Virus record (IMG/VR): IMGVR_UViG_3300027770_000027
Location: 163,353 to 227,352 of that record
Length of the DNA: 64,000 bases
Strand: one strand, 5' to 3'
Part shown: positions 12,632 to 43,125 of the stretch, piece after piece
Numbering within the stretch: position 1 is the first letter of the stretch
Layout of the letters: each line of letters starts with the position of its first letter
Made by a program: the position numbers and the translations under genes
Notes under the pieces: model-generated
The model's input: only the letters and a program-made list of their open reading frames with translations
Database searches by the model: none
Told to the model about the DNA's origin: nothing

Positions 12632-12649
12632 ATGGTAAATATAGTATAA

Positions 12650-29635: not shown

Positions 29636-29636
29636 T

Positions 29637-30692
29637 ATGTCAAAACTCTCAAGTCAATATATAGGTTTATTTTCAGACATTCATATTGGCTTGGGACAAG
29701 ACAGTTCTATTTGGCATAAAAATATATTAGAATTTGCAGAATGGGCAGCAGCAACCTATGCCCGTAAAGGAATCACAGAAATTATCATTCCTGGTGATAT
29801 ATTTCACAATCGTAATGAAATTTCTGTGAATACTTTAGCAATGGCTAAAGACTTCTTTAAAATATTTGAAGATTTTAAAATTTATATTTCAACTGGAAAT
29901 CATGACTGTTATTATAAAGACCGATCTGATGTAAATTCTATCTCCCTTCTAGGAGGTTGGAATAATATTGTATTAGTTGATAAAGAACCTCTTATTCTTA
30001 ATACTAATTTTGATAAAAATATTTCACTCATTCCGTGGGGAGTGGGTGTACAAGATATTCCTAAAAGTGATATATGTATAGGTCATTTTGAAATTAATTC
30101 ATTTAAGATGAATACCTATAAGGAATGTGACCACGGAGTTGATTCTTTGAGCCTTTTCGATAAAGCACCTTATATTATATCTGGTCATTTTCATCACAAA
30201 GACCATCGAGTCTATAACAACGGTGATATCCTATATCTAGGAAGTCCTTATCAACAAAATTTTGGAGACATGGATTCAACAAGAGGTATTTATATTTTTG
30301 ATATCAAAACAAATTGTTATGAATTTATTGAAAATACAATTTCTCCAGTTCATTGGAAAATTTCTTTACATAAAATTTTAGAAGGTGACCTTACAAGTAC
30401 CATGTTGAAGAGCATTATTCCAAACAACATGATTAGTTTTTTGATAGATAAAGAATATGGACAAGATAAACTAAGTTTGTTAATTTCAAAATTACAAAAT
30501 CTCAAACCCAAATTTTTTCGCACAGAATATCAAACTAAAGACTCTACTTTTGAAATGGGGGTTCATGATAATGAATACAACGCAGTAGATATTCCTAAAA
30601 GTTTAGAAGATTTTATTGAAGTATTAGACACTCCGTTTAAAAAAGAAGTCAATGACTATTTAAAAGAACTCTATAACACATTTGTAACATGA
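29637..30692 (+). CDS. gp47: recombination nuclease gp47 (Mre11/SbcD)
   Basis: SDIHIG, GDIFH.R, GNHD, GHFE, SGHFH, YLGSPYQ..FGD. Confidence 0.93.
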   Translation: MSKLSSQYIGLFSDIHIGLGQDSSIWHKNILEFAEWAAATYARKGITEIIIPGDIFHNRNEISVNTLAMAKDFFKIFEDFKIYISTGNHDCYYKDRSDVNSISLLGGWNNIVLVDKEPLILNTNFDKNISLIPWGVGVQDIPKSDICIGHFEINSFKMNTYKECDHGVDSLSLFDKAPYIISGHFHHKDHRVYNNGDILYLGSPYQQNFGDMDSTRGIYIFDIKTNCYEFIENTISPVHWKISLHKILEGDLTSTMLKSIIPNNMISFLIDKEYGQDKLSLLISKLQNLKPKFFRTEYQTKDSTFEMGVHDNEYNAVDIPKSLEDFIEVLDTPFKKEVNDYLKELYNTFVT

Positions 30693-31444
30693 ATGATCAA
30701 ATATCTATCGGCATTATTGACGCCTACTCACAATTAAATCTAGACCAATGTATTTCCTCAATTCCTAAAGAATTGAGGAATGCTGTTTTGGTAGTGTCTA
30801 ATACCAATAACAAAATTCCAGATGATGTAGAACACATTAAATACACAGGAGAAATAGGATTATCCTCTTTAAGAAACCGATGTTTAACTCAATTCCGATT
30901 AAATTCTAAAATAAAGTATTATTTTTTAATAACTTCAAACACAGCAATAACAGATCCAGACATTTTTCAAAATACTATTAAGACCGCCTCTGTGTTTGGT
31001 ACTTGGGTTATGACTGGCCCTGGTCTAAAGTCTATTCCTATAGAAGATGATGTTAATAATGTAACTATAAATCTATCACCGGAATTAAATGCAAATTTCT
31101 TGTTTATATATTCTAATGTATTGAAGAATGTAGGATTTTTTAATGAACAAATGTACTGTAACGAGCCATTAGATGTAATAGATTTTATCACCAGATGTCG
31201 CAAAGTTAACATCTATCCGCCAAATCATTACAATCCCACAATTGCAAAGGGAATTTTTACATCAAATACTCCTAGTACAAAGGTAAAATTTAATAATGAA
31301 GAAAAGATTCAACATTTGTCTTATGGATTTTTCCACCATCTACACAAATATGTACCAGGTCAAGGAGATCCGGTAGGAGTCACACAAGAACAGGCATTAC
31401 AAGCTCTAGAAAATATACAAAAAACTTATGCAAGATCCTTATAA
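30689..31444 (+). CDS. divergent GT2-like protein
   Basis: I.IGII, S..RN..L, VG.F.E as in the next two genes, but no acidic EDD motif. Confidence 0.55.
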   Translation: MNDQISIGIIDAYSQLNLDQCISSIPKELRNAVLVVSNTNNKIPDDVEHIKYTGEIGLSSLRNRCLTQFRLNSKIKYYFLITSNTAITDPDIFQNTIKTASVFGTWVMTGPGLKSIPIEDDVNNVTINLSPELNANFLFIYSNVLKNVGFFNEQMYCNEPLDVIDFITRCRKVNIYPPNHYNPTIAKGIFTSNTPSTKVKFNNEEKIQHLSYGFFHHLHKYVPGQGDPVGVTQEQALQALENIQKTYARSL

Positions 31445-32264
31445 AATTGGAATTGGTTTAATTACATGTGATAGACCACATTTTTTGAAGAAAAGCTTGG
31501 AAAGATTACTGTCTTTTCCTTCAATTTCTAAAGGAAACACAACATTGGTTATTGTGGATGATGGTAACAGTACTTCTATTATTGAGGACAGACCAAAGAA
31601 TGTAAAATACATTAAAACTAGTGGTAGAACTGGAGTAGCAAAGGCTAAAAACTTGGCTTTAAAATATTTGATTGAAAACAAATGTACAGATTATTTTGTA
31701 TTAGAAGATGATATTGAAATATTAAGTGAGTCTGTTTTTAGTGCGTATATTAATGCTTCTAAAAAAACTGGAATACAACATTTTAATTATGCTTTACACG
31801 GAAACCACAATAGAGAGAATGGACTTCCCGTCATTAGAAAATCTATTAAATATCCAAACGGAGAAACTATTGATTTGTACAGTAATTTGTTAGGAGCTTT
31901 AAGTTACTTTTCAAAGAAATGTCTAGATGAGGTTGGGTTATTGGATGAAAACTTTTACAATGCCATGGAACATGTAGACCACACTTATCAAATTATTAAA
32001 AAGGGATTTCATCCTCCCTTTAGATGGTTTGCAGATATTAGTAATACAGAAGGTCTTATTAGAGATATTGTAGAAGATCATAAAGAAAGTGTTATTAGAT
32101 CTCAAGAAAATTTTCAAGAAACTTTTAAAAATGGATTAGATCAATTTATTAAAAAAAATAATTTTTCAGTTGTTAATGGATATGGTCCAGCAGAAAAATT
32201 TTATTCACTAGAAAACACTCAACAAACTCTTAAAGATATATGGAAACAATTAGCGGAAAAATAG
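31428..32264 (+). CDS. GT2 family glycosyltransferase
   Basis: IG.ITC.R, IVDDG, GVA.AKN, F.LEDD, VG.LDE.F..A.EHVD. Confidence 0.85.
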   Translation: MQDPYKIGIGLITCDRPHFLKKSLERLLSFPSISKGNTTLVIVDDGNSTSIIEDRPKNVKYIKTSGRTGVAKAKNLALKYLIENKCTDYFVLEDDIEILSESVFSAYINASKKTGIQHFNYALHGNHNRENGLPVIRKSIKYPNGETIDLYSNLLGALSYFSKKCLDEVGLLDENFYNAMEHVDHTYQIIKKGFHPPFRWFADISNTEGLIRDIVEDHKESVIRSQENFQETFKNGLDQFIKKNNFSVVNGYGPAEKFYSLENTQQTLKDIWKQLAEK

Positions 32265-33031
32265 GTGTTGGTATTACCACATATAATTCTGAAAGCTATT
32301 TTCAAAAACTATATGACTCTATTGCTGAGAGTAATATAGATGAATTAGTTGTAGTAAATGGTGGAAATCCTTACAAGCAATCTTATACAAGATGTAACGC
32401 TTGGATACAAGATGAAAAAAATAGATTTCCATCAGCTTGTCGCAATAGTTGTATTGAATATTTATTAGAAAATGGGTGTGAACACATATTTCTAATAGAA
32501 GATGATATGATTATTAAAAAACCAGACATTTTTCAATTTTACATAAAACATTCAAAGATGTCTGGGTTGAAATATTTGTGTTTTGCAAGTACTTCTGCCT
32601 ATGCAGGGCCTCCTGGAGATAGAACCCCTAAATTAATAGTAAATTACTCTCACAATCTAGGAATATCCTTCTTTCCGCATATGTGTAACGAATTTACGTA
32701 TCATCATCGTTCTTGTTTTGAGGAATACGGAGTTTATGATGAAAATTTAAGAGATTTATTTGATGTGGATATGGTATATCGTCAATCCATATCAAATTCA
32801 AATGTTTCTGCTTTCTGGTGGTTTGCAGACCCTACAAATTCAGATGATTATATAGAAAATAATCCAGTAGCGGTAAGCAGACTACAAACGGCTCGAGCAG
32901 ACGGTTCCAGAGCGGACATTATTCATAAAGCATATGAATATTTTTACAAAAAACACAAATTAAATGTATTAGACATTTCAGAAAAGACTGATACAGATTT
33001 GATCAAGTTTTTAAAACGTATAAAACCATGA
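32240..33031 (+). CDS. GT2 family glycosyltransferase
   Basis: GVGITTYN, VVVNGG, RN, FLIEDD, G.YDE; paralogue of the preceding gene. Confidence 0.8.
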   Translation: METISGKIGVGITTYNSESYFQKLYDSIAESNIDELVVVNGGNPYKQSYTRCNAWIQDEKNRFPSACRNSCIEYLLENGCEHIFLIEDDMIIKKPDIFQFYIKHSKMSGLKYLCFASTSAYAGPPGDRTPKLIVNYSHNLGISFFPHMCNEFTYHHRSCFEEYGVYDENLRDLFDVDMVYRQSISNSNVSAFWWFADPTNSDDYIENNPVAVSRLQTARADGSRADIIHKAYEYFYKKHKLNVLDISEKTDTDLIKFLKRIKP

Positions 33032-33804
33032 AACTAGCCATAGGAATTAATATTTTTAAAAAGTATGATCGACAAGATCATTGTATAGAGACTCTAATTA
33101 AATTAGCTCAAGATTTTCAAGAAATAACTCTTTATAACATTACGTTTAAAGAAGAACTTTCTGAAAATGTAAATTTTGTACATCTACCATTACTTTCTCG
33201 ATGTGCTAAAGATTTAATAGAAGATTCTATTTCTACAAAACCCATATCAAAAGATTTTTTTGACATTCTATCACAACAAGATTGTGATTATTTTATGTTT
33301 TTAAATAGTGATGTGATGCCTACCAGAAAATTAATTAAATTAATTTTAAAGGGTGAATATGAAACATATGCAGCCTCAAGACATGAAATACTGCCATTAA
33401 ACAATATTACAGACGATCTCTCCGCGTTTAAAATAGAGATTGCGGGATTTGATGCATGGGTTTGTAAAAAAGAATGGTGGATAAACCATCGAGACTTGTT
33501 TAAAGATTATGTCATAGGAAATCATTTGTGGGATGTTGCATATGCAGTTACCTTTTTTCAAAATAGTAATGGAAAATTTTGTAATAAAGACTTTTATCTA
33601 GCTCATGAAAAACATCCAATTAATTGGAATGATTCTTCTCCAGAAGCCACCCACAATGCACAACTTTTTAATTCAACCACTTTTCATAAACGGTGGCATG
33701 AATTTATATATTCCAATTTAGTCCTAAGAATGCCTCCTGGACAATTTTTAATTCCATTAGATAATGAGGAAAAATTAGAAAAAAAGTTTTTTAAGTCTTT
33801 ATGA
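33028..33804 (+). CDS. putative GT-A glycosyltransferase
   Basis: F.FLNSDV, SR.E, GFDAW, IG...WD, H..H. Confidence 0.6.
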   Translation: MKLAIGINIFKKYDRQDHCIETLIKLAQDFQEITLYNITFKEELSENVNFVHLPLLSRCAKDLIEDSISTKPISKDFFDILSQQDCDYFMFLNSDVMPTRKLIKLILKGEYETYAASRHEILPLNNITDDLSAFKIEIAGFDAWVCKKEWWINHRDLFKDYVIGNHLWDVAYAVTFFQNSNGKFCNKDFYLAHEKHPINWNDSSPEATHNAQLFNSTTFHKRWHEFIYSNLVLRMPPGQFLIPLDNEEKLEKKFFKSL

Positions 33805-34490
33805 AATTATATACGGTATTCACTGAATCTCATCGAGAATTGTTTGAAAATTACTTCCTCAAAACACTTCCATGGGATAATCGATTAGAATTGAGAGTTT
33901 TATTTAAGCCACAAGTGTGTAACGCCGAGTTTCACAGTGAAGGATGGCGCGAAACTATGTATTATAAGGTCCGTTGTTTTAAACAAGCACTTTATGAAAC
34001 TGAAAAGGGAGAATGTTTTATGTTTTCTGATCCTGACATACAATTTTTTAAACCTTTTTATGATGATTTGTTGAATCGCGTAAAAAATTGTGATGCAGTC
34101 TTTCAGAATGATTATGCTGGTGGTGTTAATACTGGTTTTTTCGTAATGAGATCAACTGCTCAAACCAGAGCATTTGTCAATACTGTAGAAGGTAATTTAG
34201 AAAAATTTCCAGAAGAGCAGGCGTGTTTTAATTACTTGTTACAAACTTTTAATAATCCAGCAAACAAATCTATAGCATACAACGCTCAATTGTTGCCTCC
34301 AGAGTATTGGACCTATGGAGAAATTGCCATACAAAGACCAAAAGGAGGACAACCATTCAGTCATTGGAACGATGAAGAAGATTTTGATATTCCTAAAAAC
34401 ATAGTAATGCATCACGCCAATTGGACTAAAACTTTTAAAGACAAAATAAAAATATTAGACAGAGTTAGAGAAAAATTTAAAAAATTATGA
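33801..34490 (+). CDS. nucleotide-diphospho-sugar transferase (GT77-like)
   Basis: FSDPDIQF, NTGFF.MR, EQ..FN, HHANW....K. Confidence 0.75.
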   Translation: MKLYTVFTESHRELFENYFLKTLPWDNRLELRVLFKPQVCNAEFHSEGWRETMYYKVRCFKQALYETEKGECFMFSDPDIQFFKPFYDDLLNRVKNCDAVFQNDYAGGVNTGFFVMRSTAQTRAFVNTVEGNLEKFPEEQACFNYLLQTFNNPANKSIAYNAQLLPPEYWTYGEIAIQRPKGGQPFSHWNDEEDFDIPKNIVMHHANWTKTFKDKIKILDRVREKFKKL

Positions 34491-35179
34491 ATATTACATT
34501 GGGATTTTTAAATTTTAATAGTTTAAGTTATATTAAAAAACAATTAGAAAGAGATTATTTTAAATTATCAAATGGTATAATAAATGAAATTGTTATACAA
34601 GATGATTGCGGAGGTGATGATTTTGAATTTTTAAAAAAAGAAGAAACCTCTAATATAAAGGTTTTTCAAAATGAAAAACGAATTAAACCATTACTAGGGA
34701 GAATAAACCTTATAAACAATTGTTCAAATGATTGGGTATTGTTAATGGATTCTGATAATTTTTTAGACAAAAATTCTTTTGATGTTTTGTTTAAAAATTT
34801 AGATTTTAAAGAAAACACCATATATGCTCCGGATTTTGCAAGACCTCAATTTAATTACAAAGGAGTATCTGGAACAACACTAGATTTAAATTTGGTTAAA
34901 AATAATCTTGCCTATTTAATGTGTTTTTTAAATACTGGAAATTATTTGATTCCTAAAAAAACCTACTTGAGTGTTGCTTCTAACATTGATAAAAAATTTA
35001 CAGAATATACTATGGAAGTGTTTTATTACAACTATCTATGGTTAAGCAATAACAACCTTATCAAATGTGTTCAAGGATTTGAATATGATCATACGATGAG
35101 AGAGGATTGTTTTTCTTATTCCAACGACAGAAATTCAAATGACGTACTACATTTAATAACTCAATTATATTTAAAATGA
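34487..35179 (+). CDS. GT2 family glycosyltransferase
   Basis: EIVI.DDC, N.WV.L.DSDN, NTGNY. Confidence 0.75.
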   Translation: MNITLGFLNFNSLSYIKKQLERDYFKLSNGIINEIVIQDDCGGDDFEFLKKEETSNIKVFQNEKRIKPLLGRINLINNCSNDWVLLMDSDNFLDKNSFDVLFKNLDFKENTIYAPDFARPQFNYKGVSGTTLDLNLVKNNLAYLMCFLNTGNYLIPKKTYLSVASNIDKKFTEYTMEVFYYNYLWLSNNNLIKCVQGFEYDHTMREDCFSYSNDRNSNDVLHLITQLYLK

Positions 35180-35892
35180 TACCACCAAAATTAAAAGATT
35201 TAACCAAAGAACAATTAGAAAAGTATACATTAAATAATCAAATTCCTATCAGGGAATGGTATTTTAATGAATCGGAAGTCAATGTTTCACATCTATATGA
35301 ACCAAATGTTATACAGCACCTTAAAGAAAAGGCAAAATATAGACAAACCAATTATTACGGACAGACAGATAATTGGTTGTATCAGGCTTTAACAGATTTT
35401 TCCGTATTTCAAAAAGATGTATTAATTATAGGTTCTTTAATGCCTTGGTATGAGTCTATAGCGTTAGAGTTTGGTTGTAAATCTTGTACGGTGGTTGAAT
35501 ATAGAAAACAAGATAAATTGGTTCCAAATGTAAAATACATCCAACCTCAAGAATTGGAAGATTTAAAATTTGATGCCGTTTTTTCTATTTCATCATATGA
35601 ACATGATGGACTTGGCCGGTACGGTGACCCTTTAAGTCCAGATGCAGATTTGTCTGCAATGGAAACCATCAAAAATAATATTAAACCCGGAGGATTATTA
35701 TATCTGGCAGTTCCTGTGGGAGAAGATGAAATAGTTTGGAATGCTCATCGAGTTTATGGTAAGATTAGATTACCACTATTAATGAAAAATTGGGATCTAC
35801 TAGCAAAATATGGAGTAACAAAAGATATATGGAGCACACCGTATACAAATGATTGTCCTGCCCAACCAGTATTTGTATTAAGAAATAATTAA
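35176..35892 (+). CDS. DUF268 family SAM-methyltransferase-like protein
   Basis: IGS..PW.E, SISS.EH.GLGRYGDP..P.AD, L.VP.G.D...WNAHR.YG..R. Confidence 0.8.
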   Translation: MIPPKLKDLTKEQLEKYTLNNQIPIREWYFNESEVNVSHLYEPNVIQHLKEKAKYRQTNYYGQTDNWLYQALTDFSVFQKDVLIIGSLMPWYESIALEFGCKSCTVVEYRKQDKLVPNVKYIQPQELEDLKFDAVFSISSYEHDGLGRYGDPLSPDADLSAMETIKNNIKPGGLLYLAVPVGEDEIVWNAHRVYGKIRLPLLMKNWDLLAKYGVTKDIWSTPYTNDCPAQPVFVLRNN

Positions 35893-35894
35893 AA

Positions 35895-36785
35895 ATGAAA
35901 CTGAGCTCATTTAATGAATTTATTCTAGAAATAGAACAGTCTGCGTATCCTCCTTATCACACTGGAAAATACTTGGAACGCTATTTTATAGATTTTTACA
36001 TTAAAAATCGTAAAGAATTTGACGACACAGGATACCAATTTCTACCTATTTGTTGGACAGATATTTATCTACACAGAAATAATTTAGTTTTTAAATTACA
36101 GAATGTTTTAAACACTTTAGACATCAACAAAAAATATTTTACAGTATCTCAGCATGATGATGCACCTACCGAAAAATTACCACCTAACACCTTAAAATTT
36201 TCAGCTGGAGGTAATCAACCAAACTGTATTCCGATACCGTTAATATGTAGTGCAATATCTAATATAAAAGAAACGAAAAAAGATATATTTTGTAGTTTTG
36301 TAGGCAGTTCAACACATCCCCTTCGAATAGAGATGGTACAACACTTATCAGATAAAAAAAACTATCTTTTACAATTAAAAAATTGGTCTCCTTCCGTAGA
36401 AAATGATAAAAAGGATTTGTTCTTAGATATAACACCCAGAAGTAAATTTACATTATGCCCCAGGGGATATGGAGCAACTAGCTTTCGTTTGTATGAAGCT
36501 ATGCAATTAAATTCTGTTCCAGTGTATATTTATGAAAATTTTCCATATATTCCCTTTGAAGACAAAATAGACTGGAGTAGATTGGCAGTTTTGATAGACA
36601 GAAAAGATATAAAAAATATAGATAACATACTATTGAGTATAACAGATGAAAAATATGAAGATATGTTAAAATATATCAGAGAAATATATCCAAAATATTT
36701 TACATTAGAGGGCATGTGTCAAATTTTACTTAAAACTTTACAAGAAAAACATGAAAAAGATATTATTCGTAATAGCTCGTTATAA
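35895..36785 (+). CDS. exostosin (GT47)-like glycosyltransferase
   Basis: F.GS.TH..R, SKF.LCPRGYG.TSFRLYEA.....VPV.I, PF...IDW. Confidence 0.85.
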   Translation: MKLSSFNEFILEIEQSAYPPYHTGKYLERYFIDFYIKNRKEFDDTGYQFLPICWTDIYLHRNNLVFKLQNVLNTLDINKKYFTVSQHDDAPTEKLPPNTLKFSAGGNQPNCIPIPLICSAISNIKETKKDIFCSFVGSSTHPLRIEMVQHLSDKKNYLLQLKNWSPSVENDKKDLFLDITPRSKFTLCPRGYGATSFRLYEAMQLNSVPVYIYENFPYIPFEDKIDWSRLAVLIDRKDIKNIDNILLSITDEKYEDMLKYIREIYPKYFTLEGMCQILLKTLQEKHEKDIIRNSSL

Positions 36786-37515
36786 TGACGACCGGCAACA
36801 GATATTTGATGAGATAATCTCTCCGAGAAATAAAGCATATGCTTTAAAACATGGATTCAAATATGTAGAAATTAAAAAATCCACACATCTTCCGATTATA
36901 AGAAATAATCCTATATGGTGGAAGATGTTTATAATAAAACAATTAGTAGAAGAAAATAAATTACAGGACGGAGATACCATTACTGCTTTGGATGCTGACA
37001 TGTATATAACCGATTTAGGTGTAAATTTAGAATCTGACAAATCATTTACATATTCTATTGATAGTGGAAATACCCATTGTATGGGATGGTATACATTAAG
37101 ACTTAATGAATGGTCCAGAAATTTAATTAATATGATTACAGATGAAAATCGATATATTAAATTAATAAATAAAATATCAATTCATCCTAGACTTAATATT
37201 TATTATAATTTATGGGAGTCTTGGGCAGAACAAGCTAGTTGGTATAGCCTTGCTGGTATAATAGGGCACAGTGATATACCATTTAGTGATATGAAAAATT
37301 TTGGTTTTCATTCTGATGTGACCGAAGATACCATATATTCTATAGAAGATTTAAAAAATAATGTATTTATATATCCTACTGAATATAATGTAACAGAATG
37401 GGAGGGGGAAAGTTCTTGTCAATTTAACATTAATCAACTTAAACACAAAGAAGATGTCAAAATAAGGCATTTTGCTGGAGGTCAAAATTGGAATAATATA
37501 AAAAATTGGATTTAA
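36751..37515 (+). CDS. GT34/MNN10-like glycosyltransferase
   Basis: N..YA.KHG.KY, W.K, LDAD, EQ, YN, I.HFAG. Confidence 0.7.
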   Translation: MKKILFVIARYNDDRQQIFDEIISPRNKAYALKHGFKYVEIKKSTHLPIIRNNPIWWKMFIIKQLVEENKLQDGDTITALDADMYITDLGVNLESDKSFTYSIDSGNTHCMGWYTLRLNEWSRNLINMITDENRYIKLINKISIHPRLNIYYNLWESWAEQASWYSLAGIIGHSDIPFSDMKNFGFHSDVTEDTIYSIEDLKNNVFIYPTEYNVTEWEGESSCQFNINQLKHKEDVKIRHFAGGQNWNNIKNWI

Positions 37516-37517
37516 TT

Positions 37518-37643
37518 ATGAAATTTTTTAAAAAAATTTACATAGCATTTCAAGATCATTTAATTAATTATTTGGATATTAAAAATAATTCTAATTATTG
37601 GATTAACTGTTTTATTAAAAACAACATAGAATATATCATTTGA
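37518..37643 (+). other. 41-codon ORF or gene remnant
   Basis: MKFFKKIYIAFQDHLINYLD...EYII* fills the only large gap in the island. Confidence 0.3.
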
Positions 37644-37652
37644 CACTAAATT

Positions 37653-38684
37653 ATGAAAAAAATATTAATAACAGGTTCTGGTGGGTTGATAGGTTCAGAA
37701 GCAGTAGAATTTTATTGTAAAGAAGGATATGATGTATATGGTATAGATAATAATTATCGAGAACATTTTTTTGGAAAAAGTGGATCTGTAGAATGGAGAA
37801 TAGAAGAATTGTCTAAATATAAAAATTATAAACATTATTCTTGTGACATTACAAAAATACAAGAAGTAGAAAATATATTCAAATCTCATACATTTGATTT
37901 GATAATTCATACAGCCGCACAGCCATCTCATGATTTAGCTAGTAAAATACCAATATTGGATTTCTCGGTTAATGCTACAGGAACTTTAAATATTTTAGAA
38001 AATTATCGATTGTATTGTCCAGAATCCGTTTTTATTTTTACATCTACTAATAAAGTTTATGGGGATCGTCCTAATTATGAAACATACGTCGAAGAAGAAA
38101 ATCGATACACTCCATTAAATGAAGAATTAAAAAAAGGATTTGATGAATTTCTAAGTATAGATCAGTGTTTACATAGTGTTTTTGGGGCAAGTAAACTTGC
38201 TGCTGATATAATGGTACAAGAATATGGAAAATACTTTAATTTAAAAACAGTGGTTTTTAGAGGAGGTTGTCTTACTGGACCCAAACACTCTGGTGTTGAA
38301 TTGCACGGATTTTTGTCTTATCTTATTAAATGTTGCTTGAATAATATTCCATATAACATATATGGATATAAAGGAAAACAAGTTAGAGATAATATACATT
38401 CCTCTGATCTTATTTCTGCTTTTAATCATTACTTTTTAAATCCAAAAACTAACGGAATCGTATATAATATAGGAGGGGGTATAAATTCAAATTGTTCTGT
38501 TTTAGAAGCTATAAATATTGTAGAAAAACTTTCTAAAAAAACTATGAAAACAACATTTATAGATTATAATAGAATAGGGGACCACCAATGGTGGATTACC
38601 GATATTTCTAAATTCAAAACCGATTACCCTAATTGGAAGCAGAAATATAACTTAGAAAAATTAGTAGAAAGTTTTTTCAATTAA
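37653..38684 (+). CDS. NAD-dependent sugar epimerase (CDP-paratose 2-epimerase-like)
   Basis: TGSGGLIG, HTAAQPSH, STNKVYGD, S.FGASK.AAD..VQEYG, GKQVRD, R.GD. Confidence 0.88.
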   Translation: MKKILITGSGGLIGSEAVEFYCKEGYDVYGIDNNYREHFFGKSGSVEWRIEELSKYKNYKHYSCDITKIQEVENIFKSHTFDLIIHTAAQPSHDLASKIPILDFSVNATGTLNILENYRLYCPESVFIFTSTNKVYGDRPNYETYVEEENRYTPLNEELKKGFDEFLSIDQCLHSVFGASKLAADIMVQEYGKYFNLKTVVFRGGCLTGPKHSGVELHGFLSYLIKCCLNNIPYNIYGYKGKQVRDNIHSSDLISAFNHYFLNPKTNGIVYNIGGGINSNCSVLEAINIVEKLSKKTMKTTFIDYNRIGDHQWWITDISKFKTDYPNWKQKYNLEKLVESFFN

Positions 38685-38697
38685 CTTAAATATCCAC

Positions 38698-39597
38698 ATG
38701 AAAACATTAAGAATAAATTTTGTCGATTTTTGGCCCAATTTTATGAAAAATGATAATATGTACTATAATATACTATCATCTAAATATAATGTTATTATTG
38801 ATGAAATAAATCCAGAAATTTTATTTTTTTCTGTTGATTATGCAGGTGCTGGGGAAAGGTTTAAATATAAGAATTGTTTACGAGTTTTTCATACTGGAGA
38901 AAGTGTGTATGTTAACTGGGATGAAACGGATGTTGCATTTACAATGCATCATACAGACGACAAAAGGCACTACAGAATTCCGGGATGGGCCACGTATTTA
39001 AACTGGTACAACAGACCATATAATGACAATCGAGATATAGCCAATTTAATGGATATTGACACATTACTTTCCAAACCAAAGGAAGTGAATAAATCAAAAT
39101 TTTGTAGTTTTATCGCAACGCAACCAAAAGGAAGAAGAGTAGATTTTGTACCAAAATTAAATCAATATAAAACTGTTCATAGTCCGGGACCATTATATAA
39201 TAATACACCAAGAATTGTAGATATTAATGGAAATTGGGCAAGAGGTGATCAGAGATATAAAACCGATTTTATAAAAAATTGTAAATTTGATGTAGCAATG
39301 GAAAATACACAAGTTCCGGGGTATGCTACAGAAAGAATAATACATGCAATGTATGTAAACACAATACCCATTTATTGGGGATCAGAAACTATAGAACAGG
39401 ATTTCAATCCAGATTCATTTATTAATTGGCATAAATATGGATCAGATGAAGCTACAATTGAAGCTGTCAAAGAAATTGATTCTGATCTTAAAAAATATAC
39501 TAAAATGTTAAGAGAACCGTTTTGGATTGATAATAAAATACCAGATTCTGTAAAACCAGAAGCTATTTTAGGGTTTTTAGAAAAATTTATACAATGA
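38698..39597 (+). CDS. alpha-1,3-fucosyltransferase (GT10)
   Basis: F.DFW, F.TGE, KFCSFI, KF..AMEN....GY.TE.I..A....TIPIYWG, FNP..FIN. Confidence 0.88.
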   Translation: MKTLRINFVDFWPNFMKNDNMYYNILSSKYNVIIDEINPEILFFSVDYAGAGERFKYKNCLRVFHTGESVYVNWDETDVAFTMHHTDDKRHYRIPGWATYLNWYNRPYNDNRDIANLMDIDTLLSKPKEVNKSKFCSFIATQPKGRRVDFVPKLNQYKTVHSPGPLYNNTPRIVDINGNWARGDQRYKTDFIKNCKFDVAMENTQVPGYATERIIHAMYVNTIPIYWGSETIEQDFNPDSFINWHKYGSDEATIEAVKEIDSDLKKYTKMLREPFWIDNKIPDSVKPEAILGFLEKFIQ

Positions 39598-40289
39598 AAC
39601 CTGATAAAATATATATCATACATTATACAAAACTCACAGAACGATATAACAAAATATCAAAATTTTTAGAATTTTGTAAAATACCTTATGAGTTTATAAC
39701 TGATTATGATAAAGAAGATTTAACGGATGAAATTATAAAATATTTTTATTCAACGGATGTAAATGGATTTAATAATAAAATTAAATTTCTTTGGGATAAT
39801 AATATAAACAAATTTAGAGTATTAAGTTTATCCGAAATTTCTTGTGCTATTAAACATATGATAGCAATTAAAAAAATATCAGAAGAATGCAAAAATTATG
39901 GAATGATTATAGAAGATGATGCAATATTTTTTGATAATTTTAATACGAATTTTTTGAAATATATAAAAAATACACCAGATGATTGGGGATCGATTTTCTT
40001 GGGAGAAGGGTGTGGAATACAATTTCAAAAAGAAATTATTTCTCGAAATACAAAAATAAACGATAATATATTCTTGATTAAACCACCAGCATCAAATTGT
40101 GCGGAGGCTTATTTATTAAAGAGTGAATTAGCCGCAAAAATTTACAAAAATATTCCTTTTCATATAGCTTTTGATTGGGAAATAGCATATCAATTATATT
40201 TTTTAAATGTACCAACATATTGGTGGTATCCTTCATTAGTAAGACAAGGCTCTAAAGATGGCTCATATAAATCCTCATTAAACAATTAG
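39594..40289 (+). CDS. GT25 family glycosyltransferase
   Basis: IYIIH...L.ER, EISC..KH, IIEDD, AYL.....A, DW, P.LV.QG. Confidence 0.8.
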   Translation: MKPDKIYIIHYTKLTERYNKISKFLEFCKIPYEFITDYDKEDLTDEIIKYFYSTDVNGFNNKIKFLWDNNINKFRVLSLSEISCAIKHMIAIKKISEECKNYGMIIEDDAIFFDNFNTNFLKYIKNTPDDWGSIFLGEGCGIQFQKEIISRNTKINDNIFLIKPPASNCAEAYLLKSELAAKIYKNIPFHIAFDWEIAYQLYFLNVPTYWWYPSLVRQGSKDGSYKSSLNN

Positions 40290-40294
40290 AAAAT

Positions 40295-40894
40295 ATGAAT
40301 TTAAATCTTAATATAATAAACAAATATTTTACTCCTAATAATATATTAGACATAGGTGCAAATATTGGTGATTTTAATCTGTATAGCCAACACTTTTTTC
40401 CAAACGCATACATATATTCAATTGAAGGCAACAAAACATGCGAAAATTGTCTAAAAGATCGCAACTTAAATTATAAAATTTGTTTATTGGGTTCTAAAAA
40501 AGATACGGCAATTTTTTATAAAAATAAACTTGAACCCACATCTACGGGAAATTCCTTATATAGAGAATTAACTCCTCATTTTTGTGATGAAAACGTCATA
40601 GAAGAATTATCACAAATAGAAACATTAGATGACATTTTGGCATATTCTGATATTGTATTTGATTTTATAAAAATTGACACTCAAGGATCAGAAATAGATA
40701 TATTGAAAGGTGGGTTAAAAACATTAAATAAAGCAAAAGCGGTATTATTAGAAGTATCATACAAACCATATAATTTAAACTCTCCATTAGAAGACGAAGT
40801 TATTTCGTTCATGAAAATATATGGATATGAAACTATCGAAGAATTAGCACACAATCCGAATGTCGGACAACGTGATTTACTATTTATAAAATGA
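40295..40894 (+). CDS. FkbM family methyltransferase
   Basis: LDIGANIG, TLDD, IKIDTQGSE..IL.G, LEV. Confidence 0.88.
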   Translation: MNLNLNIINKYFTPNNILDIGANIGDFNLYSQHFFPNAYIYSIEGNKTCENCLKDRNLNYKICLLGSKKDTAIFYKNKLEPTSTGNSLYRELTPHFCDENVIEELSQIETLDDILAYSDIVFDFIKIDTQGSEIDILKGGLKTLNKAKAVLLEVSYKPYNLNSPLEDEVISFMKIYGYETIEELAHNPNVGQRDLLFIK

Positions 40895-41853
40895 AAATTG
40901 GATTTTACATGCCCCATATTGATATACAAGGAACTGGAGTTTCTGTATTTGAATATTGCCTTTTTAATAAAAGCTTATTAGGAAACGAGTCTGTAATGAT
41001 TCATGACAAAAACCATAGTAGCAATAATGAAAAAGCTATAACAAAATTCAAAGATGCCGGTATAGAAATCATCAGTTTAGATGGATCAGAAAATCAGAAA
41101 GAAATAGAAAAAACACTGGAAGATAAAAATATTGATGGATTATATATTCAAAAATTAGGAAGAATAGCAGATGGGGGGTTTGCTAGCAATAAACCAACTC
41201 TTATACATTCTAACGGACTATATAATGAACCTCACGGAACTGTATATTCTTATATTAGTGAATGGTCTAGTTTGAAATGCTCTAATGGAAAACATCCATA
41301 TATTCCTTATATAGTAAGATTGCCCGATTTTGAAGAAGATTATCGCAAACATTTAAATATACCAAAAGATGCAATTGTATATGGAAGAATTGGTGGTTAT
41401 TATTCTTGGAATATTGAATGGGTTAATAATGTGATTATAGATTACTTAAATACAAACAAAAATGTTTATTTTTTATTTGTTCAAACACCTAATTTTATTA
41501 ATCATGACCGTGTTTTGTTTTTGAATTCCACATCAAATCTAGAAGAAAAAAGAAAATTTATTAATACTTGCGATGTGATGATTCATGCACGATTAGAAGG
41601 AGAAACATTTGGTCTTGCTTGTGCAGAATTTTCGTTTTGTAATAAGCCTGTTATTACTTTTGAACAATCTGATCAACAAAATCATATTCATATTCTAAAA
41701 GACAAAGGAATATATTATAATTCTCCGCAATCTCTCTCTGATATATTTAAATCATTTACAAAACAACCAGAAAAAGACTGGAATGCGTATAAAGATTTTA
41801 ATCCAAAAACAGTAATGGAAAAATTTAAAACAATTTTTTTGAATATTATATAA
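40891..41853 (+). CDS. GT-B (GT4-like) glycosyltransferase
   Basis: R..L.IP....V.GR.G, CD.M.HAR..GETFGLA.AE.....KPVIT. Confidence 0.8.
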   Translation: MKIGFYMPHIDIQGTGVSVFEYCLFNKSLLGNESVMIHDKNHSSNNEKAITKFKDAGIEIISLDGSENQKEIEKTLEDKNIDGLYIQKLGRIADGGFASNKPTLIHSNGLYNEPHGTVYSYISEWSSLKCSNGKHPYIPYIVRLPDFEEDYRKHLNIPKDAIVYGRIGGYYSWNIEWVNNVIIDYLNTNKNVYFLFVQTPNFINHDRVLFLNSTSNLEEKRKFINTCDVMIHARLEGETFGLACAEFSFCNKPVITFEQSDQQNHIHILKDKGIYYNSPQSLSDIFKSFTKQPEKDWNAYKDFNPKTVMEKFKTIFLNII

Positions 41854-41854
41854 T

Positions 41855-42430
41855 ATGAAAATACAAATAAAAAAAGACGATGTCATACAATTCAATATAG
41901 AACATTTAAAAAAACTATCAATTTCACCAGAACATTGGCATCCCGCTGGAATCAGTGAATACCGACTATATTCATATCTTTCTACATTATTTGATAATAC
42001 TATTATATTAGATATAGGAACTAGAACTGGTAATTCTGCCCTTGCTTTATCACATAATTCATCTAATAAGATTATTAGTTATGATTTACAAGAACAAGGC
42101 GCGAGTAACATAAAAAAGGATAATATTACTTGGAAAATTAAAAATTTCATGGAAGACAGTGAAATAAATTGGGATAATGTTTCTATAGTTATGATAGACG
42201 TAGACCCACATGATGGAATACAAGAAAGAGAAATGATGAAATGGTTGGAAGAAAAAAAATGGAAAGGTATTCTTATACATGATGATATAATGGAATTTGG
42301 ACGATGGGCTGAAAATTGTAATATGTGGGATGAAATAAAATACGAAAAACTTATTTTAACCGATATCGGCCATTCGACAGGAACTGGGTTGGTGAATTTC
42401 GGAGAATCCCACGAAATTATTATAATTTAA
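41855..42430 (+). CDS. class I SAM-dependent methyltransferase (Methyltransf_24-like)
   Basis: LDIGT..G.SA, ISYD, IDVDPH, G.L..DDI, GH.TGTG. Confidence 0.75.
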   Translation: MKIQIKKDDVIQFNIEHLKKLSISPEHWHPAGISEYRLYSYLSTLFDNTIILDIGTRTGNSALALSHNSSNKIISYDLQEQGASNIKKDNITWKIKNFMEDSEINWDNVSIVMIDVDPHDGIQEREMMKWLEEKKWKGILIHDDIMEFGRWAENCNMWDEIKYEKLILTDIGHSTGTGLVNFGESHEIIII

Positions 42431-42431
42431 T

Positions 42432-43073
42432 ATGAAGAATGATTTTAAATACACATCAAACAATAATAGATCACAGGTTTTAGAATTTTTAAAAGAAAAT
42501 AATTTTTCTAGAGTGTTAGATGTTGGATACTCTGCTAATAACTGGTCTTCTGAATATACAACTCATTATATGGATATTAATGAATCAGATCTGTCTAAAA
42601 AATGGTTTGAGGGAGATATTAATGTACCATATATTTGGGAGAACGTACAAAAAGAAGTTGACAAAAATGGTAAATTTGATTTTTGTATATGTACTCATAC
42701 ATTAGAGGATATTATTAATCCTCATTATGTTTGTTGTATGATGGAAAAATATTCAAAGGCAGGGTTTATTGCAACTCCCTCAAAGTATGTTGAAATGTCT
42801 CGCCACGTAGATATGGGATATCCTTATAGAGGGTATATTCATCATCGTTATATTTTTAATAAAGAAAATAATGAGTATGTGGCATATCCAAAATTAAGTT
42901 TTGTGGAACAAGATAATCGATTTGACCGTTTAAGTTCCGATTTACAAGAAAATAACGCAGAAATACAATTTTTTTGGGAGGATAAAATTAATTTAATTAT
43001 AAAAAACAACAATTATATGGGACCCACTGTGGATCATGTCTTGAGGTATTACAACGACCTCTTACAGAACTAA
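42432..43073 (+). CDS. class I SAM-dependent methyltransferase-like protein
   Basis: VLDVG, GDIN, FDF.IC.HTLEDI.NP, G.I..PS. Confidence 0.75.
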   Translation: MKNDFKYTSNNNRSQVLEFLKENNFSRVLDVGYSANNWSSEYTTHYMDINESDLSKKWFEGDINVPYIWENVQKEVDKNGKFDFCICTHTLEDIINPHYVCCMMEKYSKAGFIATPSKYVEMSRHVDMGYPYRGYIHHRYIFNKENNEYVAYPKLSFVEQDNRFDRLSSDLQENNAEIQFFWEDKINLIIKNNNYMGPTVDHVLRYYNDLLQN

Positions 43074-43081
43074 TTTAGATC

Positions 43082-43109
43082 TTGAATTTTTCTAGTTGTT
43101 CTGTATAAT
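43082..43109 (+). promoter_or_regulatory. sigma70-like promoter TTGAAT-N16-TATAAT upstream of gp46
   Basis: Sits at the right edge of the glycan island. Confidence 0.55.
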
Positions 43110-43125
43110 ACAGAAGCCTAGATAT

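What the first reader, a model, noticed from the sequence alone, without database searches (positions are those of the whole stretch)
30689..43073. 12.4-kb glycan-synthesis island between gp47 and gp46, including eukaryote-type GT families
Seen: 16 tightly coupled genes (GT2-like x4, another GT-A, GT77-like, GT47 exostosin, GT34-like, GT10, GT25, GT4-like, a CDP-paratose-epimerase-like SDR, and four methyltransferase-like genes including DUF268 and FkbM). They separate two subunits of one complex whose genes lie close together in T4-like phages. The distal part looks more AT-rich, and gp46 has its own sigma70-like promoter. No flippase, polymerase or obvious membrane protein is present. Inference: a cytoplasmic assembly line for a branched, methylated, probably fucosylated oligosaccharide, more like giant-virus virion glycosylation than O-antigen conversion; probably a hypervariable locus.
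Basis: partly seen in the sequence, partly recalled or inferred. Interest (0 to 1): 0.75.

Follow-up and report, generated by a model that had tools for sequence, protein, structure and literature searches.

The report
Hypervariable phage glycan-building gene island
An uncultured 227-kb freshwater T4-like phage carries 16 intact genes for soluble sugar-adding and sugar-methylating enzymes between its two recombination-nuclease genes, at a spot where related phages carry anything from no gene to about 20 different glycan genes; what the sugar chain is attached to is still unknown.

Summary
Window 30689-43073 has 16 co-directional, mostly overlapping ORFs between gp47 (SbcD-like) and gp46 (SbcC-like): 11 glycosyltransferases (GT2-like/GT-A x5, GT77, GT47, GT34-like, GT10, GT25, GT4-like), one CDP-tyvelose-2-epimerase-like SDR and four methyltransferases. 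None has a transmembrane helix.

In 80 IMG/VR relatives the gp47-gp46 gap ranges from 12 bp, through about 790 bp (one GT-A gene), to more than 10 kb. Its 441 cargo ORFs fall into 127 families. The commonest Pfam families among them are glycan-related, and none is a polytopic membrane protein.

A near-identical 2023 strain keeps i05-i08 (31 synonymous, 9 non-synonymous SNPs across i04-i08) but does not match the window from about 36.9 kb on. The genes are therefore under purifying selection and are swapped as cassettes. The island sits where the uvsY-gp47 operon ends and a gp46 unit with a conserved -10 element begins.

The genome has no known route to a hydroxylated DNA base, so DNA glycosylation is unlikely. 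The acceptor is unresolved: phage-made (virion) proteins about 0.38, host envelope glycolipid about 0.35.

GT-rich hypervariable islands are already described in large cyanomyoviruses and pelagimyophages. This is a new variant of that kind, differing in location, in its conserved-core/variable-periphery layout and in size.

The parts
27191..30692 (+). Upstream backbone operon: uvsY (27191-27592), uvsW (27592-29037), gp55 late sigma (29006-29635) and gp47 SbcD/Mre11-like (29637-30692). All are overlapping or abutting, and gp47 overlaps i01 by 4 nt.
   Evidence: Pfam and PHROG. The same order is seen in relatives and in cyanophage S-SCSM1. A sigma70-like TTGAAA...TATAAT lies upstream of uvsY.
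30689..31444 (+). i01: GT-A-derived protein (251 aa) with a conserved Ser-Asn where the paralogous anchor GT has its Glu-Asp-Asp (DxD) motif. It may be non-catalytic or metal-independent.
   Evidence: phrog_2456, 1.5e-6. BLASTP against i03, 3e-8. The SN is conserved in all 18 sequences of the family, 17 relatives plus i01. Present in 20 loci.
31428..33031 (+). i02 (31428-32264) and i03 (32240-33031): paralogous 'anchor' GT-A/GT2-like glycosyltransferases with an intact EDD motif. This family is the one gene present at this locus in most relatives.
   Evidence: Pfam GT2, 5e-6. phrog_2456, 7e-19. The family is found in 72 loci. AF2 model pLDDT 91 with GT-A fold hits B4GALNT1, WrtF, TarS and TarP. 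Weak match to Myrna gp234 GT, 7e-7.
33028..33804 (+). i04: GT-A (GT2-like) fold protein with no Pfam hit. It is conserved at the proximal end in 18 loci.
   Evidence: ESM-Atlas structure TM 0.62-0.66 to GT2 clusters; nearest clusters are 93-94% viral; cluster 2.
33801..37515 (+). Middle block: i05 GT77 (33801-34490), i06 GT2 (34487-35179), i07 DUF268 methyltransferase (35176-35892), i08 GT47 exostosin-like (35895-36785) and i09 GT34-like (36751-37515).
   Evidence: Pfam; Atlas; PDB exostosin 1e-8 and a weak match to PBCV-1 A075L, 0.022. Collinear in the closest relative L164. L015 lacks i06 and i07. SNPs against a 2023 strain across i04-i08 are 31 synonymous and 9 non-synonymous.
37516..37652 (.). 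137-nt spacer, GC 15%. It is the only sizeable gap inside the island and lies next to the point where related strains diverge.
   Evidence: X3/X4 contigs match up to about 36.8-36.95 kb and not beyond. L164 differs after the i09 homologue.
37653..43073 (+). Distal variable block: i10 CDP-tyvelose-2-epimerase-like SDR (37653-38684), i11 GT10 alpha1,3-fucosyltransferase-like (38698-39597), i12 GT25 (39594-40289), i13 FkbM methyltransferase (40295-40894), i14 GT4-like GT-B (40891-41853), i15 O-methyltransferase-like (41855-42430) and i16 Methyltransf_23 (42432-43073).
   Evidence: i10, i06, i07 and i15 are singletons in the hotspot pangenome.
38687..38692 (+). TAAATA late-promoter-like motif 5 nt before the i11 ATG. 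It is the only one in the island.
   Evidence: The motif lies 3-10 nt before the ATG in 46 of 280 genes genome-wide, against 1 of 1034 internal ATGs. The metatranscriptome contig that starts at 38488 has depth 10, against about 6 upstream; this is weak evidence.
43074..43125 (+). Intergenic leader of gp46, with TTGAAT (43082-43087), 16 nt, then TATAAT (43104-43109). The -10 hexamer sits inside a 17-nt palindrome (43097-43113).
   Evidence: TATAAT is conserved at this position in 15 of 22 distinct relatives.
43126..44952 (+). gp46, SbcC/Rad50-like. The start is probably the ATG at 43126.
   Evidence: phrog_77, 4e-94; SMC_N; alignment of relatives' starts.
45747..47048 (+). d2: GT-B (GT4-like) glycosyltransferase.
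   Evidence: phrog_7162. tblastn hits at 41-68% identity in about 35 loci, of which 17 gave full-length ORFs. AF2 pLDDT 80, with Foldseek hits SenB, PglA, WaaG and Gtf3 at about 1e-9. Swiss-Prot analogues are mostly lipid-acceptor GT4 enzymes. Nearest Atlas clusters are 100% viral.

Best explanation
The island is the cargo of a clade-wide recombination hotspot. The hotspot lies at the junction between the uvsY-uvsW-gp55-gp47 operon and a separately promoted gp46 unit.

The cargo is a self-contained set of soluble enzymes that builds and decorates one hetero-oligosaccharide in the cytoplasm from host nucleotide-sugars. A conserved proximal core (i01-i04, probably together with the conserved GT-B d2 just beyond gp46) would lay down the inner sugars. 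The middle block (i05-i09) and the swappable distal block (i10-i16) would then add strain-specific outer residues: a fucose or similar deoxyhexose via GT10, a 2-epimerised NDP-hexose via i10, and O-methyl caps via four methyltransferases.

The genes are read mainly by run-through from the early/middle-type operon, with one late-type promoter before i11.

Shown: gene content, solubility, intactness under purifying selection, hypervariability with a conserved core, operon position, and the absence of known hydroxylated-base pathways.

Inferred: the order of action, the sugar identities and the acceptor.

My leaning for the acceptor is a phage-made protein, most likely a virion component. That would be a phage counterpart of the autonomous glycosylation of chloroviruses and mimiviruses and of mycobacteriophage virion glycosylation. 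The confidence given (0.38) is for this acceptor-specific version. The acceptor-neutral part (a functional, soluble, hypervariable glycan-assembly locus) I hold at about 0.9.
For: Functional and soluble:
- 16 intact, coupled ORFs.
- 31 synonymous against 9 non-synonymous SNPs versus a 2023 strain.
- 100%-identical contigs in a lake metatranscriptome.
- No TM helix here, and none polytopic among 441 cargo proteins, while 26 of 280 genes genome-wide have a TM-like segment.

Hotspot:
- Gaps of 12, 21 and 42 bp, about 790 bp, 4-9.5 kb and more than 10 kb.
- 127 families, 65 of them singletons.
- Pfam tally: GT2, GT11, GT47, GT10, GT25, GT8, GT77, FkbM, MT_24, RMNT_CmcI, GMD/epimerases, NTP_transferase.
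- L164 has 20 genes (15.4 kb) with the first nine collinear and the rest different.

Operon junction: conserved -10 before gp46.

For a phage-made acceptor:
- No initiating phosphoglycosyl-transferase, flippase, polymerase, ABC permease or acyltransferase-type membrane protein in any of about 70 islands.
- The anchor GT-A and d2 are conserved across relatives with only 39-62% gp47 identity, which presumably have different hosts.
- The nearest families are overwhelmingly viral, with some giant-virus clusters among them.
- i03 weakly resembles the GT of Myrna, whose virions are glycosylated (PMC12363180).
- There is a late-type promoter at i11.
- Small late-promoter genes elsewhere in the genome encode Pro/Thr/Ser-rich segments that could take O-glycans.
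- From general knowledge: a strictly lytic phage gains little from new LPS while the old receptors remain on a non-growing cell.
Against: - No direct evidence of any glycosylated virion protein.
- The island sits in the replication/recombination module, not beside structural genes as in mycobacteriophages.
- Late-type promoters are depleted in island genes: 1 of 16 here and 6 of 348 in relatives, against 16% genome-wide.
- The family repertoire (GT25, GT10/11, GT4, FkbM, a tyvelose-type epimerase, and heptose pathways in relatives) is the classic LPS/LOS/O-antigen toolkit.
- The structural analogues of d2 are mostly lipid-acceptor GT4 enzymes.
- An LOS-type route on lipid A-core needs no dedicated flippase.
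- The host is unknown.
- RNA-library contigs cannot exclude carried-over DNA.
Confidence: 0.38

Rival explanations
1. Host-envelope remodelling. The soluble phage enzymes work at the cytoplasmic face of the inner membrane on a host lipid-linked acceptor (lipid A-core, LOS-style, or a host-primed undecaprenyl-PP sugar). Host MsbA/Lpt or the host's Wzx or ABC transporter then exports the altered glycan. This changes the infected cell's surface, for example to block superinfection or to stop progeny being lost on cell debris. It is the usual reading of comparable islands in cyanomyoviruses and pelagimyophages.
For: - The repertoire is typical of LPS/LOS/O-antigen: GT25, GT10, GT4, GT2, FkbM, a tyvelose-type epimerase. 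Relatives add GT11, GT8, GMD, Polysacc_synt_2, and NDP-heptose-type gene sets in L163 and L164.
- Expression is mainly with the early/middle-type operon, and late promoters are depleted.
- d2 resembles WaaG, PglA and glycolipid synthases.
- i10 has 55-60% identical homologues in many bacterial phyla.
- Literature: PMC7029224 and PMC12801897.
Against: - No initiating transferase or any membrane component in about 70 islands.
- The core GTs are conserved across very divergent phages, whereas host surface glycans are highly variable.
- Most families are phage-resident rather than host-like.
- In a lytic infection of a non-growing cell the old surface molecules persist (general knowledge).
- No experimental proof exists for any lytic aquatic myovirus.
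Confidence: 0.35
2. DNA hypermodification. The GTs glycosylate the phage's own DNA, as T-even alpha/beta-glucosyltransferases and the recently described multi-sugar 5hmC/5hoC systems do. This would explain the position among replication and recombination genes.
For: - T4 keeps a-gt next to gene 47 (general knowledge).
- DNA glycans of up to three sugars, including heptose and arabinose, are known (bioRxiv 10.1101/2023.12.21.572611; PMC13326640).
- The island is co-transcribed with DNA-metabolism genes.
- d2 has a GT-B fold, like T4 a-gt and b-gt.
Against: - The complete genome (CheckV 100%) has no thymidylate-synthase-family hydroxymethylase or hydroxylase, no C5 cytosine methyltransferase and no Tet/JBP hit (that search had no positive control).
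- No TGT/DpdA hit.
- dTMP synthesis is by ThyX.
- 11 GTs plus 4 methyltransferases far exceed any known DNA glycan.
- d2 matches GT4 enzymes, not the T4 enzymes.
Confidence: 0.06
3. Other cytoplasmic product. The enzymes make a free or small-molecule-linked methylated oligosaccharide, for example a compatible solute, storage glycan or decoy. Alternatively they glycosylate a host cytoplasmic protein as part of host takeover.
For: All enzymes are soluble. Methylated cytoplasmic polysaccharides made by GT4 and methyltransferase enzymes exist in mycobacteria; a Foldseek hit to the methylmannose polysaccharide mannosyltransferase is among the matches for d2.
Against: There is no obvious reason for strain-level hypervariability of such a product. 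No precedent in phages. Nothing specific points to it.
Confidence: 0.1

Closest known systems
GT/LPS-like gene clusters of large cyanomyoviruses (P-SSM2, S-SCSM1, S-SCSM2R)
   Same: - T4-like backbone in the same order, uvsY-uvsW-gp55-gp47-gp46.
- Many soluble GTs (S-SCSM2R: 13, including GT10, GT11, GT25, GT2 and GT1) plus NDP-sugar epimerases (PMC12801897).
- Function unproven.
   Different: In S-SCSM1 only a 270-bp gene separates gp47 and gp46, and the GT clusters lie elsewhere. Here the glycan genes I could detect (11 GTs, plus d2 next door) are concentrated at the gp47|gp46 junction; no homologue of the hotspot cargo lies elsewhere in the genome. The phage has no psbA and shares less than 30% identity in gp43 and gp46 with any isolate.
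Host-recognition-cluster hypervariable island of pelagimyophages (PMC7029224)
   Same: A hypervariable region rich in glycosyltransferases and sugar-nucleotide genes in uncultured aquatic T4-like myoviruses, with small GT clusters elsewhere in those genomes.
   Different: That island lies between VrlC and gp14 in the structural module, together with tail-fibre genes. This one is in the recombination module, contains no structural genes, and has a conserved GT core with a variable periphery.
Mycobacteriophage virion glycosylation (Che8, Corndog, Myrna; Freeman et al. 2023, as cited in PMC12363180)
   Same: Phage-encoded soluble GT-A enzymes. i03 and i01 hit the same PHROG (phrog_2456), and i03 matches Myrna gp234.
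   Different: Those cassettes have 2-4 genes, and glycosylation has been shown by experiment. Here there are 16 genes, no experimental data, an unknown host and only weak similarity (25% over 162 aa).
Autonomous glycosylation gene sets of chloroviruses and mimiviruses (e.g. PBCV-1 A064R, A075L)
   Same: Multiple soluble GTs, including a small GT47-like enzyme, GT34/GT77-like enzymes and sugar O-methyltransferases. There are no membrane export components, and the content is clade-specific. The nearest Atlas and BFVD neighbours include Nucleocytoviricota proteins.
   Different: Sequence similarity to A075L is marginal (E 0.022). Those viruses infect eukaryotes, and their glycans have been shown on capsid proteins or fibrils.
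T-even DNA glucosylation (a-gt, b-gt) and multi-sugar 5hmC/5hoC systems
   Same: GT genes embedded among T4-type replication and recombination genes; in T4, a-gt lies next to gene 47 (general knowledge).
   Different: No pathway to a hydroxylated pyrimidine was found. There are far more GTs and methyltransferases, and the GT families are different.

Membership tests
T4-type gp46/gp47 (Rad50/Mre11-like) nuclease gene pair as flanks | An SbcD-like metallophosphoesterase and an SbcC-like SMC/ABC ATPase encoded close together | tested here: met
   phrog_100 1e-57 and phrog_77 4e-94; SMC_N. The two genes are adjacent (12-42 bp apart) in relatives L069, L080 and L019.
Hypervariable glycan (LPS-like AMG) islands of aquatic T4-like myoviruses | T4-like core backbone; a cluster of several GTs and sugar-nucleotide genes; content differs between related phages | tested here: met
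   Backbone; 11 GTs + SDR + 4 MTs; variability.
Bacterial O-antigen/capsule locus (Wzx/Wzy- or ABC-transporter-dependent) | Initiating polyprenyl-phosphate glycosyl-phosphotransferase, plus a flippase and polymerase or an ABC transporter | tested here: not met
   No TM protein in the island and none polytopic among 441 cargo proteins of relatives. None of these families is in the top 25 of the Pfam tally.
Seroconverting prophage modules (GtrABC, Oac) | Membrane proteins GtrA, GtrB and GtrC, or an acyltransferase_3, carried by a temperate phage | tested here: not met
   No membrane proteins. The T4-like replication and late-transcription machinery indicates a lytic phage; no integrase search was run.
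Phage DNA glycosylation systems | A route to 5hmC, 5hmU or 5hoC (ThyA-family enzyme, or C5-methyltransferase plus TET/JBP dioxygenase) together with the GTs | tested here: not met
   PF00303, PF00145 and PF12851 are absent from the complete genome (the PF12851 search had no positive control). ThyX is present.
Mycobacteriophage-type virion glycosylation cassette | GT genes plus glycans demonstrated on capsid or tail-tube subunits | not testable with these tools
   There is only weak GT-A similarity. Glycan on virion proteins needs wet-lab work.
CAZy GT10 (alpha1,3/4-fucosyltransferase), i11 | FucT N-terminal and GT10 C-terminal domains above the Pfam cut-offs | tested here: met
   PF18025 63.6 bits, PF00852 59.3 bits; 2nzw 2e-24. 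Donor specificity not tested.
CAZy GT47 (exostosin), i08 | Exostosin GT47 domain above the cut-off | tested here: met
   PF03016 67.4 bits against a cut-off of 33.4; EXT1 1e-8. Only the C-terminal half of the model is covered.
CAZy GT34, i09 | Match to PF05637 Glyco_transf_34 | tested here: inconclusive
   No direct Pfam hit. Atlas neighbours at scores of 0.97 carry PF05637, DUF273 or PF03407. It is GT34/GT77-clan-like, but family membership is not shown.
CDP-tyvelose (paratose) 2-epimerase, i10 | Closest solved relatives are TyvE enzymes; equivalog-level family score | tested here: inconclusive
   1orr and 9rl0 at about 1e-42, far ahead of other SDRs. It is below every NCBIfam equivalog cut-off, and the genome has no CDP-glucose pathway genes. 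The substrate is unknown.
GT-A metal-dependent glycosyltransferase, i01 | DxD motif after the beta4 strand | tested here: not met
   Ser-Asn replaces Glu-Asp-Asp in i01 and all 17 relatives' orthologues.

The most novel reading that the evidence does not exclude
A whole clade of uncultured freshwater T4-like jumbo phages glycosylates its own virions (or another phage-made protein) with strain-specific, O-methylated, deoxyhexose-containing oligosaccharides. The glycans would be built entirely by phage-encoded soluble enzymes: a conserved inner-core set (d2, the anchor GT-A and a DxD-less paralogue) and a cassette-swapped outer set. That would make these phages the bacterial-virus equivalent of chlorovirus and mimivirus autonomous glycosylation, with virion glycan 'serotypes' evolving the way bacterial O-antigens do.
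Probability: 0.3. Interest if true: 0.8.

Novelty: new variant of a known kind. Interest (0 to 1): 0.5.

Why it matters
Large glycosyltransferase clusters in lytic aquatic myoviruses have been noted for twenty years, but none has been assigned a function by experiment.

This locus offers an unusually clean system for that question:
- One hotspot with defined borders.
- A conserved core and a swappable periphery.
- No membrane parts.
- Abundant natural variants, from no gene to about 20 genes.
- Evidence of purifying selection, and presence in a metatranscriptome.

If the acceptor proves to be the virion, glycan coats would become a general and diversifying feature of environmental phages. That would bear on adsorption, decay, grazing and detection. 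If it is the host envelope, it would show that lytic phages rebuild the LPS core on a large scale.

The enzymes (small soluble GT47, GT34-like, GT77, GT10, GT25 and sugar O-methyltransferases) are also a compact source of glycoengineering catalysts.

Tried and rejected
- Named relatives. Megablast of 20 kb against GenBank phages found nothing. tblastn with gp46 and gp43 gave only hits below 30% identity, so no cultured relative or host was found.
- d2 as a DpdA-type transglycosylase, suspected because it sits next to a QueE-like gene. Rejected: it has a GT-B/GT4-like fold, and a profile search of PDB sequences gave nothing.
- T4 consensus late promoter TATAAATA. Not enriched. The shorter TAAATA close to the start codon is the real signal.
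- Generic sigma70 and terminator scan. No better than shuffles.
- Fold searches with the anchor GT-A (PDB and BFVD). Only generic GT-A hits, which say nothing about the acceptor.
- Complex prediction of i02 with the DxD-less i01. No answer, so not usable either way.
- Search for a bacterial donor or host through i10. Homologues of 55-60% identity are spread over CPR, Omnitrophota, Bacteroidota and Gammaproteobacteria, which gives no clue.
- Rfam scan and repeat search of the island and its borders. No RNA family, no flanking direct or inverted repeats, no att-like sites.
- tRNAs in the window: none.
Rejected on the intact ORFs, conserved motifs and the 31:9 synonymous to non-synonymous SNP ratio.
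- Freeman et al. 2023 could not be read because it is not held. Its content is cited only through PMC12363180.

Full report
**Context.** The window is the last 64 kb of a 227,352-bp IMG/VR virus record that CheckV rates as complete. Genes in the window:
- portal and tail genes, primase and helicase;
- uvsY, uvsW, gp55, gp47, gp46 and gp43;
- ThyX, UvsX and gp41.

The backbone order uvsY-uvsW-gp55-gp47-gp46 is the same as in cyanophage S-SCSM1. No isolate is close: gp46 and gp43 reach less than 30% identity to any GenBank phage. There is no psbA. The sequence comes from freshwater, and it recurs in lake metagenomes and in one lake metatranscriptome.

**Observation.** Sixteen + strand ORFs fill 30689-43073. 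Junctions are overlaps of 4-35 nt or gaps of 1-13 nt. The one exception is a 137-nt, 15%-GC spacer at 37516-37652.

- By Pfam: GT2 (i02, i06), GT77 (i05), DUF268 (i07), GT47 (i08), SDR (i10), GT10 (i11), GT25 (i12), FkbM (i13), GT1/4 (i14) and Methyltransf_23 (i16).
- By PHROG: i01 and i03 are glycosyltransferases.
- By Atlas look-alikes: i04 is GT-A/GT2-like, i09 is GT34-like and i15 is O-methyltransferase-like.
- i10 is specifically closest to CDP-tyvelose 2-epimerases (about 1e-42 against 1e-19 for other SDRs). It falls below every NCBIfam equivalog cut-off.
- i11 resembles H. pylori alpha1,3-FucT.
- i08 resembles exostosins and, marginally, PBCV-1 A075L.

No protein has a hydrophobic segment compatible with a TM helix.

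GC is 0.28-0.30 against a genome mean of 0.364. The distal part is only slightly more AT-rich than the proximal part.

**Elsewhere in the genome.**
- The island holds the only SDR and the only GT2 matches.
- There is no nucleotidyltransferase.
- No homologue of any hotspot cargo protein lies elsewhere.
- Donors must therefore come from the host pool, apart from one epimerisation.
- Just beyond gp46 lies d2 (45747-47048). It is a GT-B/GT4-like protein found next to gp46 in many relatives, including two of the three that have no gene between gp47 and gp46.

**The locus is a clade-wide hotspot.** In 80 IMG/VR relatives (39-62% gp47 identity) the gp47-gp46 distance takes these values:
- 12, 21 or 42 bp;
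- about 790 bp, holding one GT-A gene of the i02/i03 family (many loci);
- 4-9.5 kb;
- more than 10 kb.

The 441 ORFs found there fall into 127 families, 65 of them singletons. The anchor GT-A family occurs in 72 loci, i01 in 20 and i04 in 18.

A Pfam tally over one representative per family shows that the commonest identifiable families are glycan-related: GT2, GT11, GT47, GT10, GT25, GT8, GT77, FkbM, MT_24, RMNT_CmcI, GMD/epimerases, Polysacc_synt_2 and NTP_transferase.

Only 7 of the 441 have even one borderline hydrophobic segment, and none is polytopic. By comparison, 26 of 280 genes genome-wide have such a segment.

Individual relatives show how the cargo changes:
- L164, the closest relative seen, has 20 genes (15.4 kb) between gp47 and gp46. 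The first nine are collinear with i01-i09, and the distal set is different: GT25, GT10, FkbM, GT32, further methyltransferases and a HAD-nucleotidyltransferase.
- L015 lacks i06, i07 and i10.
- In L163, a 234,892-bp relative, the block GT77-GT47-GT34-like-GT10-FkbM-GT25-GT1 plus a heptose-type pathway lies in a different place, near SegE and PhoH. Blocks therefore move between hotspots.

**Population data.** Contigs from two 2023 freshwater metagenomes match 33549-36787 at about 97-98% identity. Apart from short patches, they do not match from about 36.9 kb to the end of the laid stretch at 39499. Of the 40 listed SNPs in i04-i08, 31 are synonymous. The genes are thus maintained by selection while the distal part is exchanged between near-identical strains.

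A lake metatranscriptome holds 100%-identical contigs across the island, at depth about 6 and at depth 10 from 38488 onward. DNA carry-over cannot be excluded.

**Expression signals.**
- TAAATA lies 3-10 nt (mode 5-6) before the ATG of 46 of 280 genes, including portal-region and large structural genes. It does so at 1 of 1034 internal ATGs. This looks like a T4-type late promoter that gives near-leaderless mRNAs.
- In the island only i11 has it. In relatives' islands 6 of 348 ORFs do, against 1 of 1531 internal ATGs. The island is therefore mostly not late-promoted and is probably read from the sigma70-like promoter upstream of uvsY.
- Upstream of gp46 a TATAAT lies 9-17 nt before the ATG in 15 of 22 distinct relatives, with or without cargo. 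Here it sits inside a 17-nt palindrome.
- The hotspot is thus the seam between two transcription units. Insertions there are expressed without disrupting either unit.

**What it does.** The enzymes form a soluble assembly line for a methylated hetero-oligosaccharide. The acceptor is the open question.

*DNA is unlikely.* The genome has no ThyA-family enzyme, no C5-methyltransferase, no Tet/JBP hit and no TGT/DpdA hit, and it makes dTMP with ThyX. Known DNA glycans need a hydroxylated pyrimidine (PMC13326640; bioRxiv 10.1101/2023.12.21.572611).

*Between host envelope and phage-made protein the evidence is nearly balanced.*

For the host envelope:
- The repertoire is classic LPS/LOS/O-antigen.
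- Expression is of the non-late class.
- d2's structural analogues are lipid-acceptor enzymes.
- This is the literature's default reading (PMC7029224, PMC12801897).
- An LOS-type route needs no dedicated flippase.

For a phage-made acceptor:
- Initiating or membrane components are absent from about 70 islands.
- The core GTs are conserved across very divergent phages.
- The families are overwhelmingly viral and partly shared with giant viruses.
- There is weak similarity to the GT of Myrna, a phage with glycosylated virions (PMC12363180).
- i11 has a late-type promoter.
- Changing LPS on a non-growing, soon-to-lyse cell brings little benefit.

I lean slightly towards the virion (0.38 against 0.35), and I regard this as unresolved.

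**A further detail.** i01 is a paralogue of the anchor GT. Its DxD motif is replaced by a conserved Ser-Asn in i01 and all 17 relatives' orthologues. That suggests a non-catalytic or mechanistically different partner. A complex prediction with i02 gave no answer.

**Novelty.** GT-rich hypervariable regions in large aquatic T4-like phages are known (P-SSM2, S-SCSM1, S-SCSM2R, and the pelagimyophage HRC). What differs here:
- the site, the gp47|gp46 seam, where S-SCSM1 has only a 270-bp gene;
- the architecture, with a conserved core GT set plus d2 and a cassette-swapped periphery;
- the strict absence of membrane parts across the clade;
- the density: 11 GTs in one operon, 12 with d2, compared with 13 in the whole S-SCSM2R genome, which was reported as the highest number in a marine phage.

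I rate it a new variant of a known kind, of moderate interest.

Noticed in passing
genome-wide; in the window e.g. upstream of 5246(-), 15281(-), 16942(-), 19584(-), 21753(-), 38698(+), 59892(+): TAAATA lies 3-10 nt (mostly 5-6) before the ATG of 46 of 280 genes, against 1 of 1034 internal ATGs. It is probably a T4-type late promoter placed so close to the start codon that late mRNAs would be leaderless or nearly so.
   Followed up: partly
window 45747-47048 (+): d2 is a GT-B/GT4-like glycosyltransferase found next to gp46 in many relatives, including two of the three that have no gene between gp47 and gp46. It has no Pfam or NCBIfam hit, and its nearest Atlas clusters are all viral. It may be the first enzyme of the pathway.
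   Followed up: partly
window 30689-31444 (+): i01 is a GT-A paralogue whose DxD motif is replaced by a conserved Ser-Asn in i01 and all 17 relatives' orthologues. It is a candidate pseudo-glycosyltransferase or acceptor-binding partner.
   Followed up: partly
window 11891-12685 (-) and 44959-45711 (+): QueC and a QueE-like radical-SAM gene are present, but no TGT/DpdA hit was found in the genome. This suggests preQ0-type 7-deazaguanine synthesis without a recognisable DNA transglycosylase. In more distant relatives the QueE gene lies about 10 kb upstream of gp47 instead.
   Followed up: partly
window 26507-26923 (-): A SegE-like GIY-YIG homing endonuclease lies just upstream of uvsY. SegE homologues sit at or near the same spot in L164 and L163. 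Homing endonucleases could help move neighbouring cassettes.
   Followed up: no
window 43097-43113: A 17-nt perfect palindrome encloses the conserved TATAAT before gp46. Several relatives also have a palindrome around their TATAAT. It may be an operator or an RNA hairpin.
   Followed up: partly
window 43096 vs 43126: The mechanical ORF for gp46 starts at a TTG (43096). Alignment with relatives indicates that the ATG at 43126 (MKS...) is the real start.
   Followed up: yes
window 21833-26506 (+): A 1557-aa protein with NHL/teneurin-type beta-propeller repeats, about 25% Ser+Thr and higher GC (about 0.42). It is probably a large fibre or surface protein of the virion.
   Followed up: no
genome G000:C1 51116-51853 (-) and 19213-19560 (+), outside the window: Two small genes with the late-promoter motif encode Pro/Thr/Ser-rich, mucin-like segments. 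They are speculative O-glycan acceptors.
   Followed up: no
genome-wide intergenic regions: The heptamers and octamers CTTCCCC(A) and GTTCCCCC are about 9-fold enriched in regions upstream of genes (11 regions against 0.7 expected). Their meaning is unknown.
   Followed up: no
L163 8586-20283: In a 234,892-bp relative the block GT77-GT47-GT34-like-GT10-FkbM-GT25-GT1, plus a SIS/transaldolase/GHMP-kinase/cytidylyltransferase/epimerase (heptose-type) set, lies in another hotspot on the far side of uvsY/uvsW. The glycan block is therefore mobile between hotspots.
   Followed up: partly
genome G000:C1 50837-51073 and 93821-96506, outside the window: There are 14 tRNA genes in two clusters; 11 of the 14 have T at the first anticodon position (which reads A-ending codons). 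The window itself has none.
   Followed up: no
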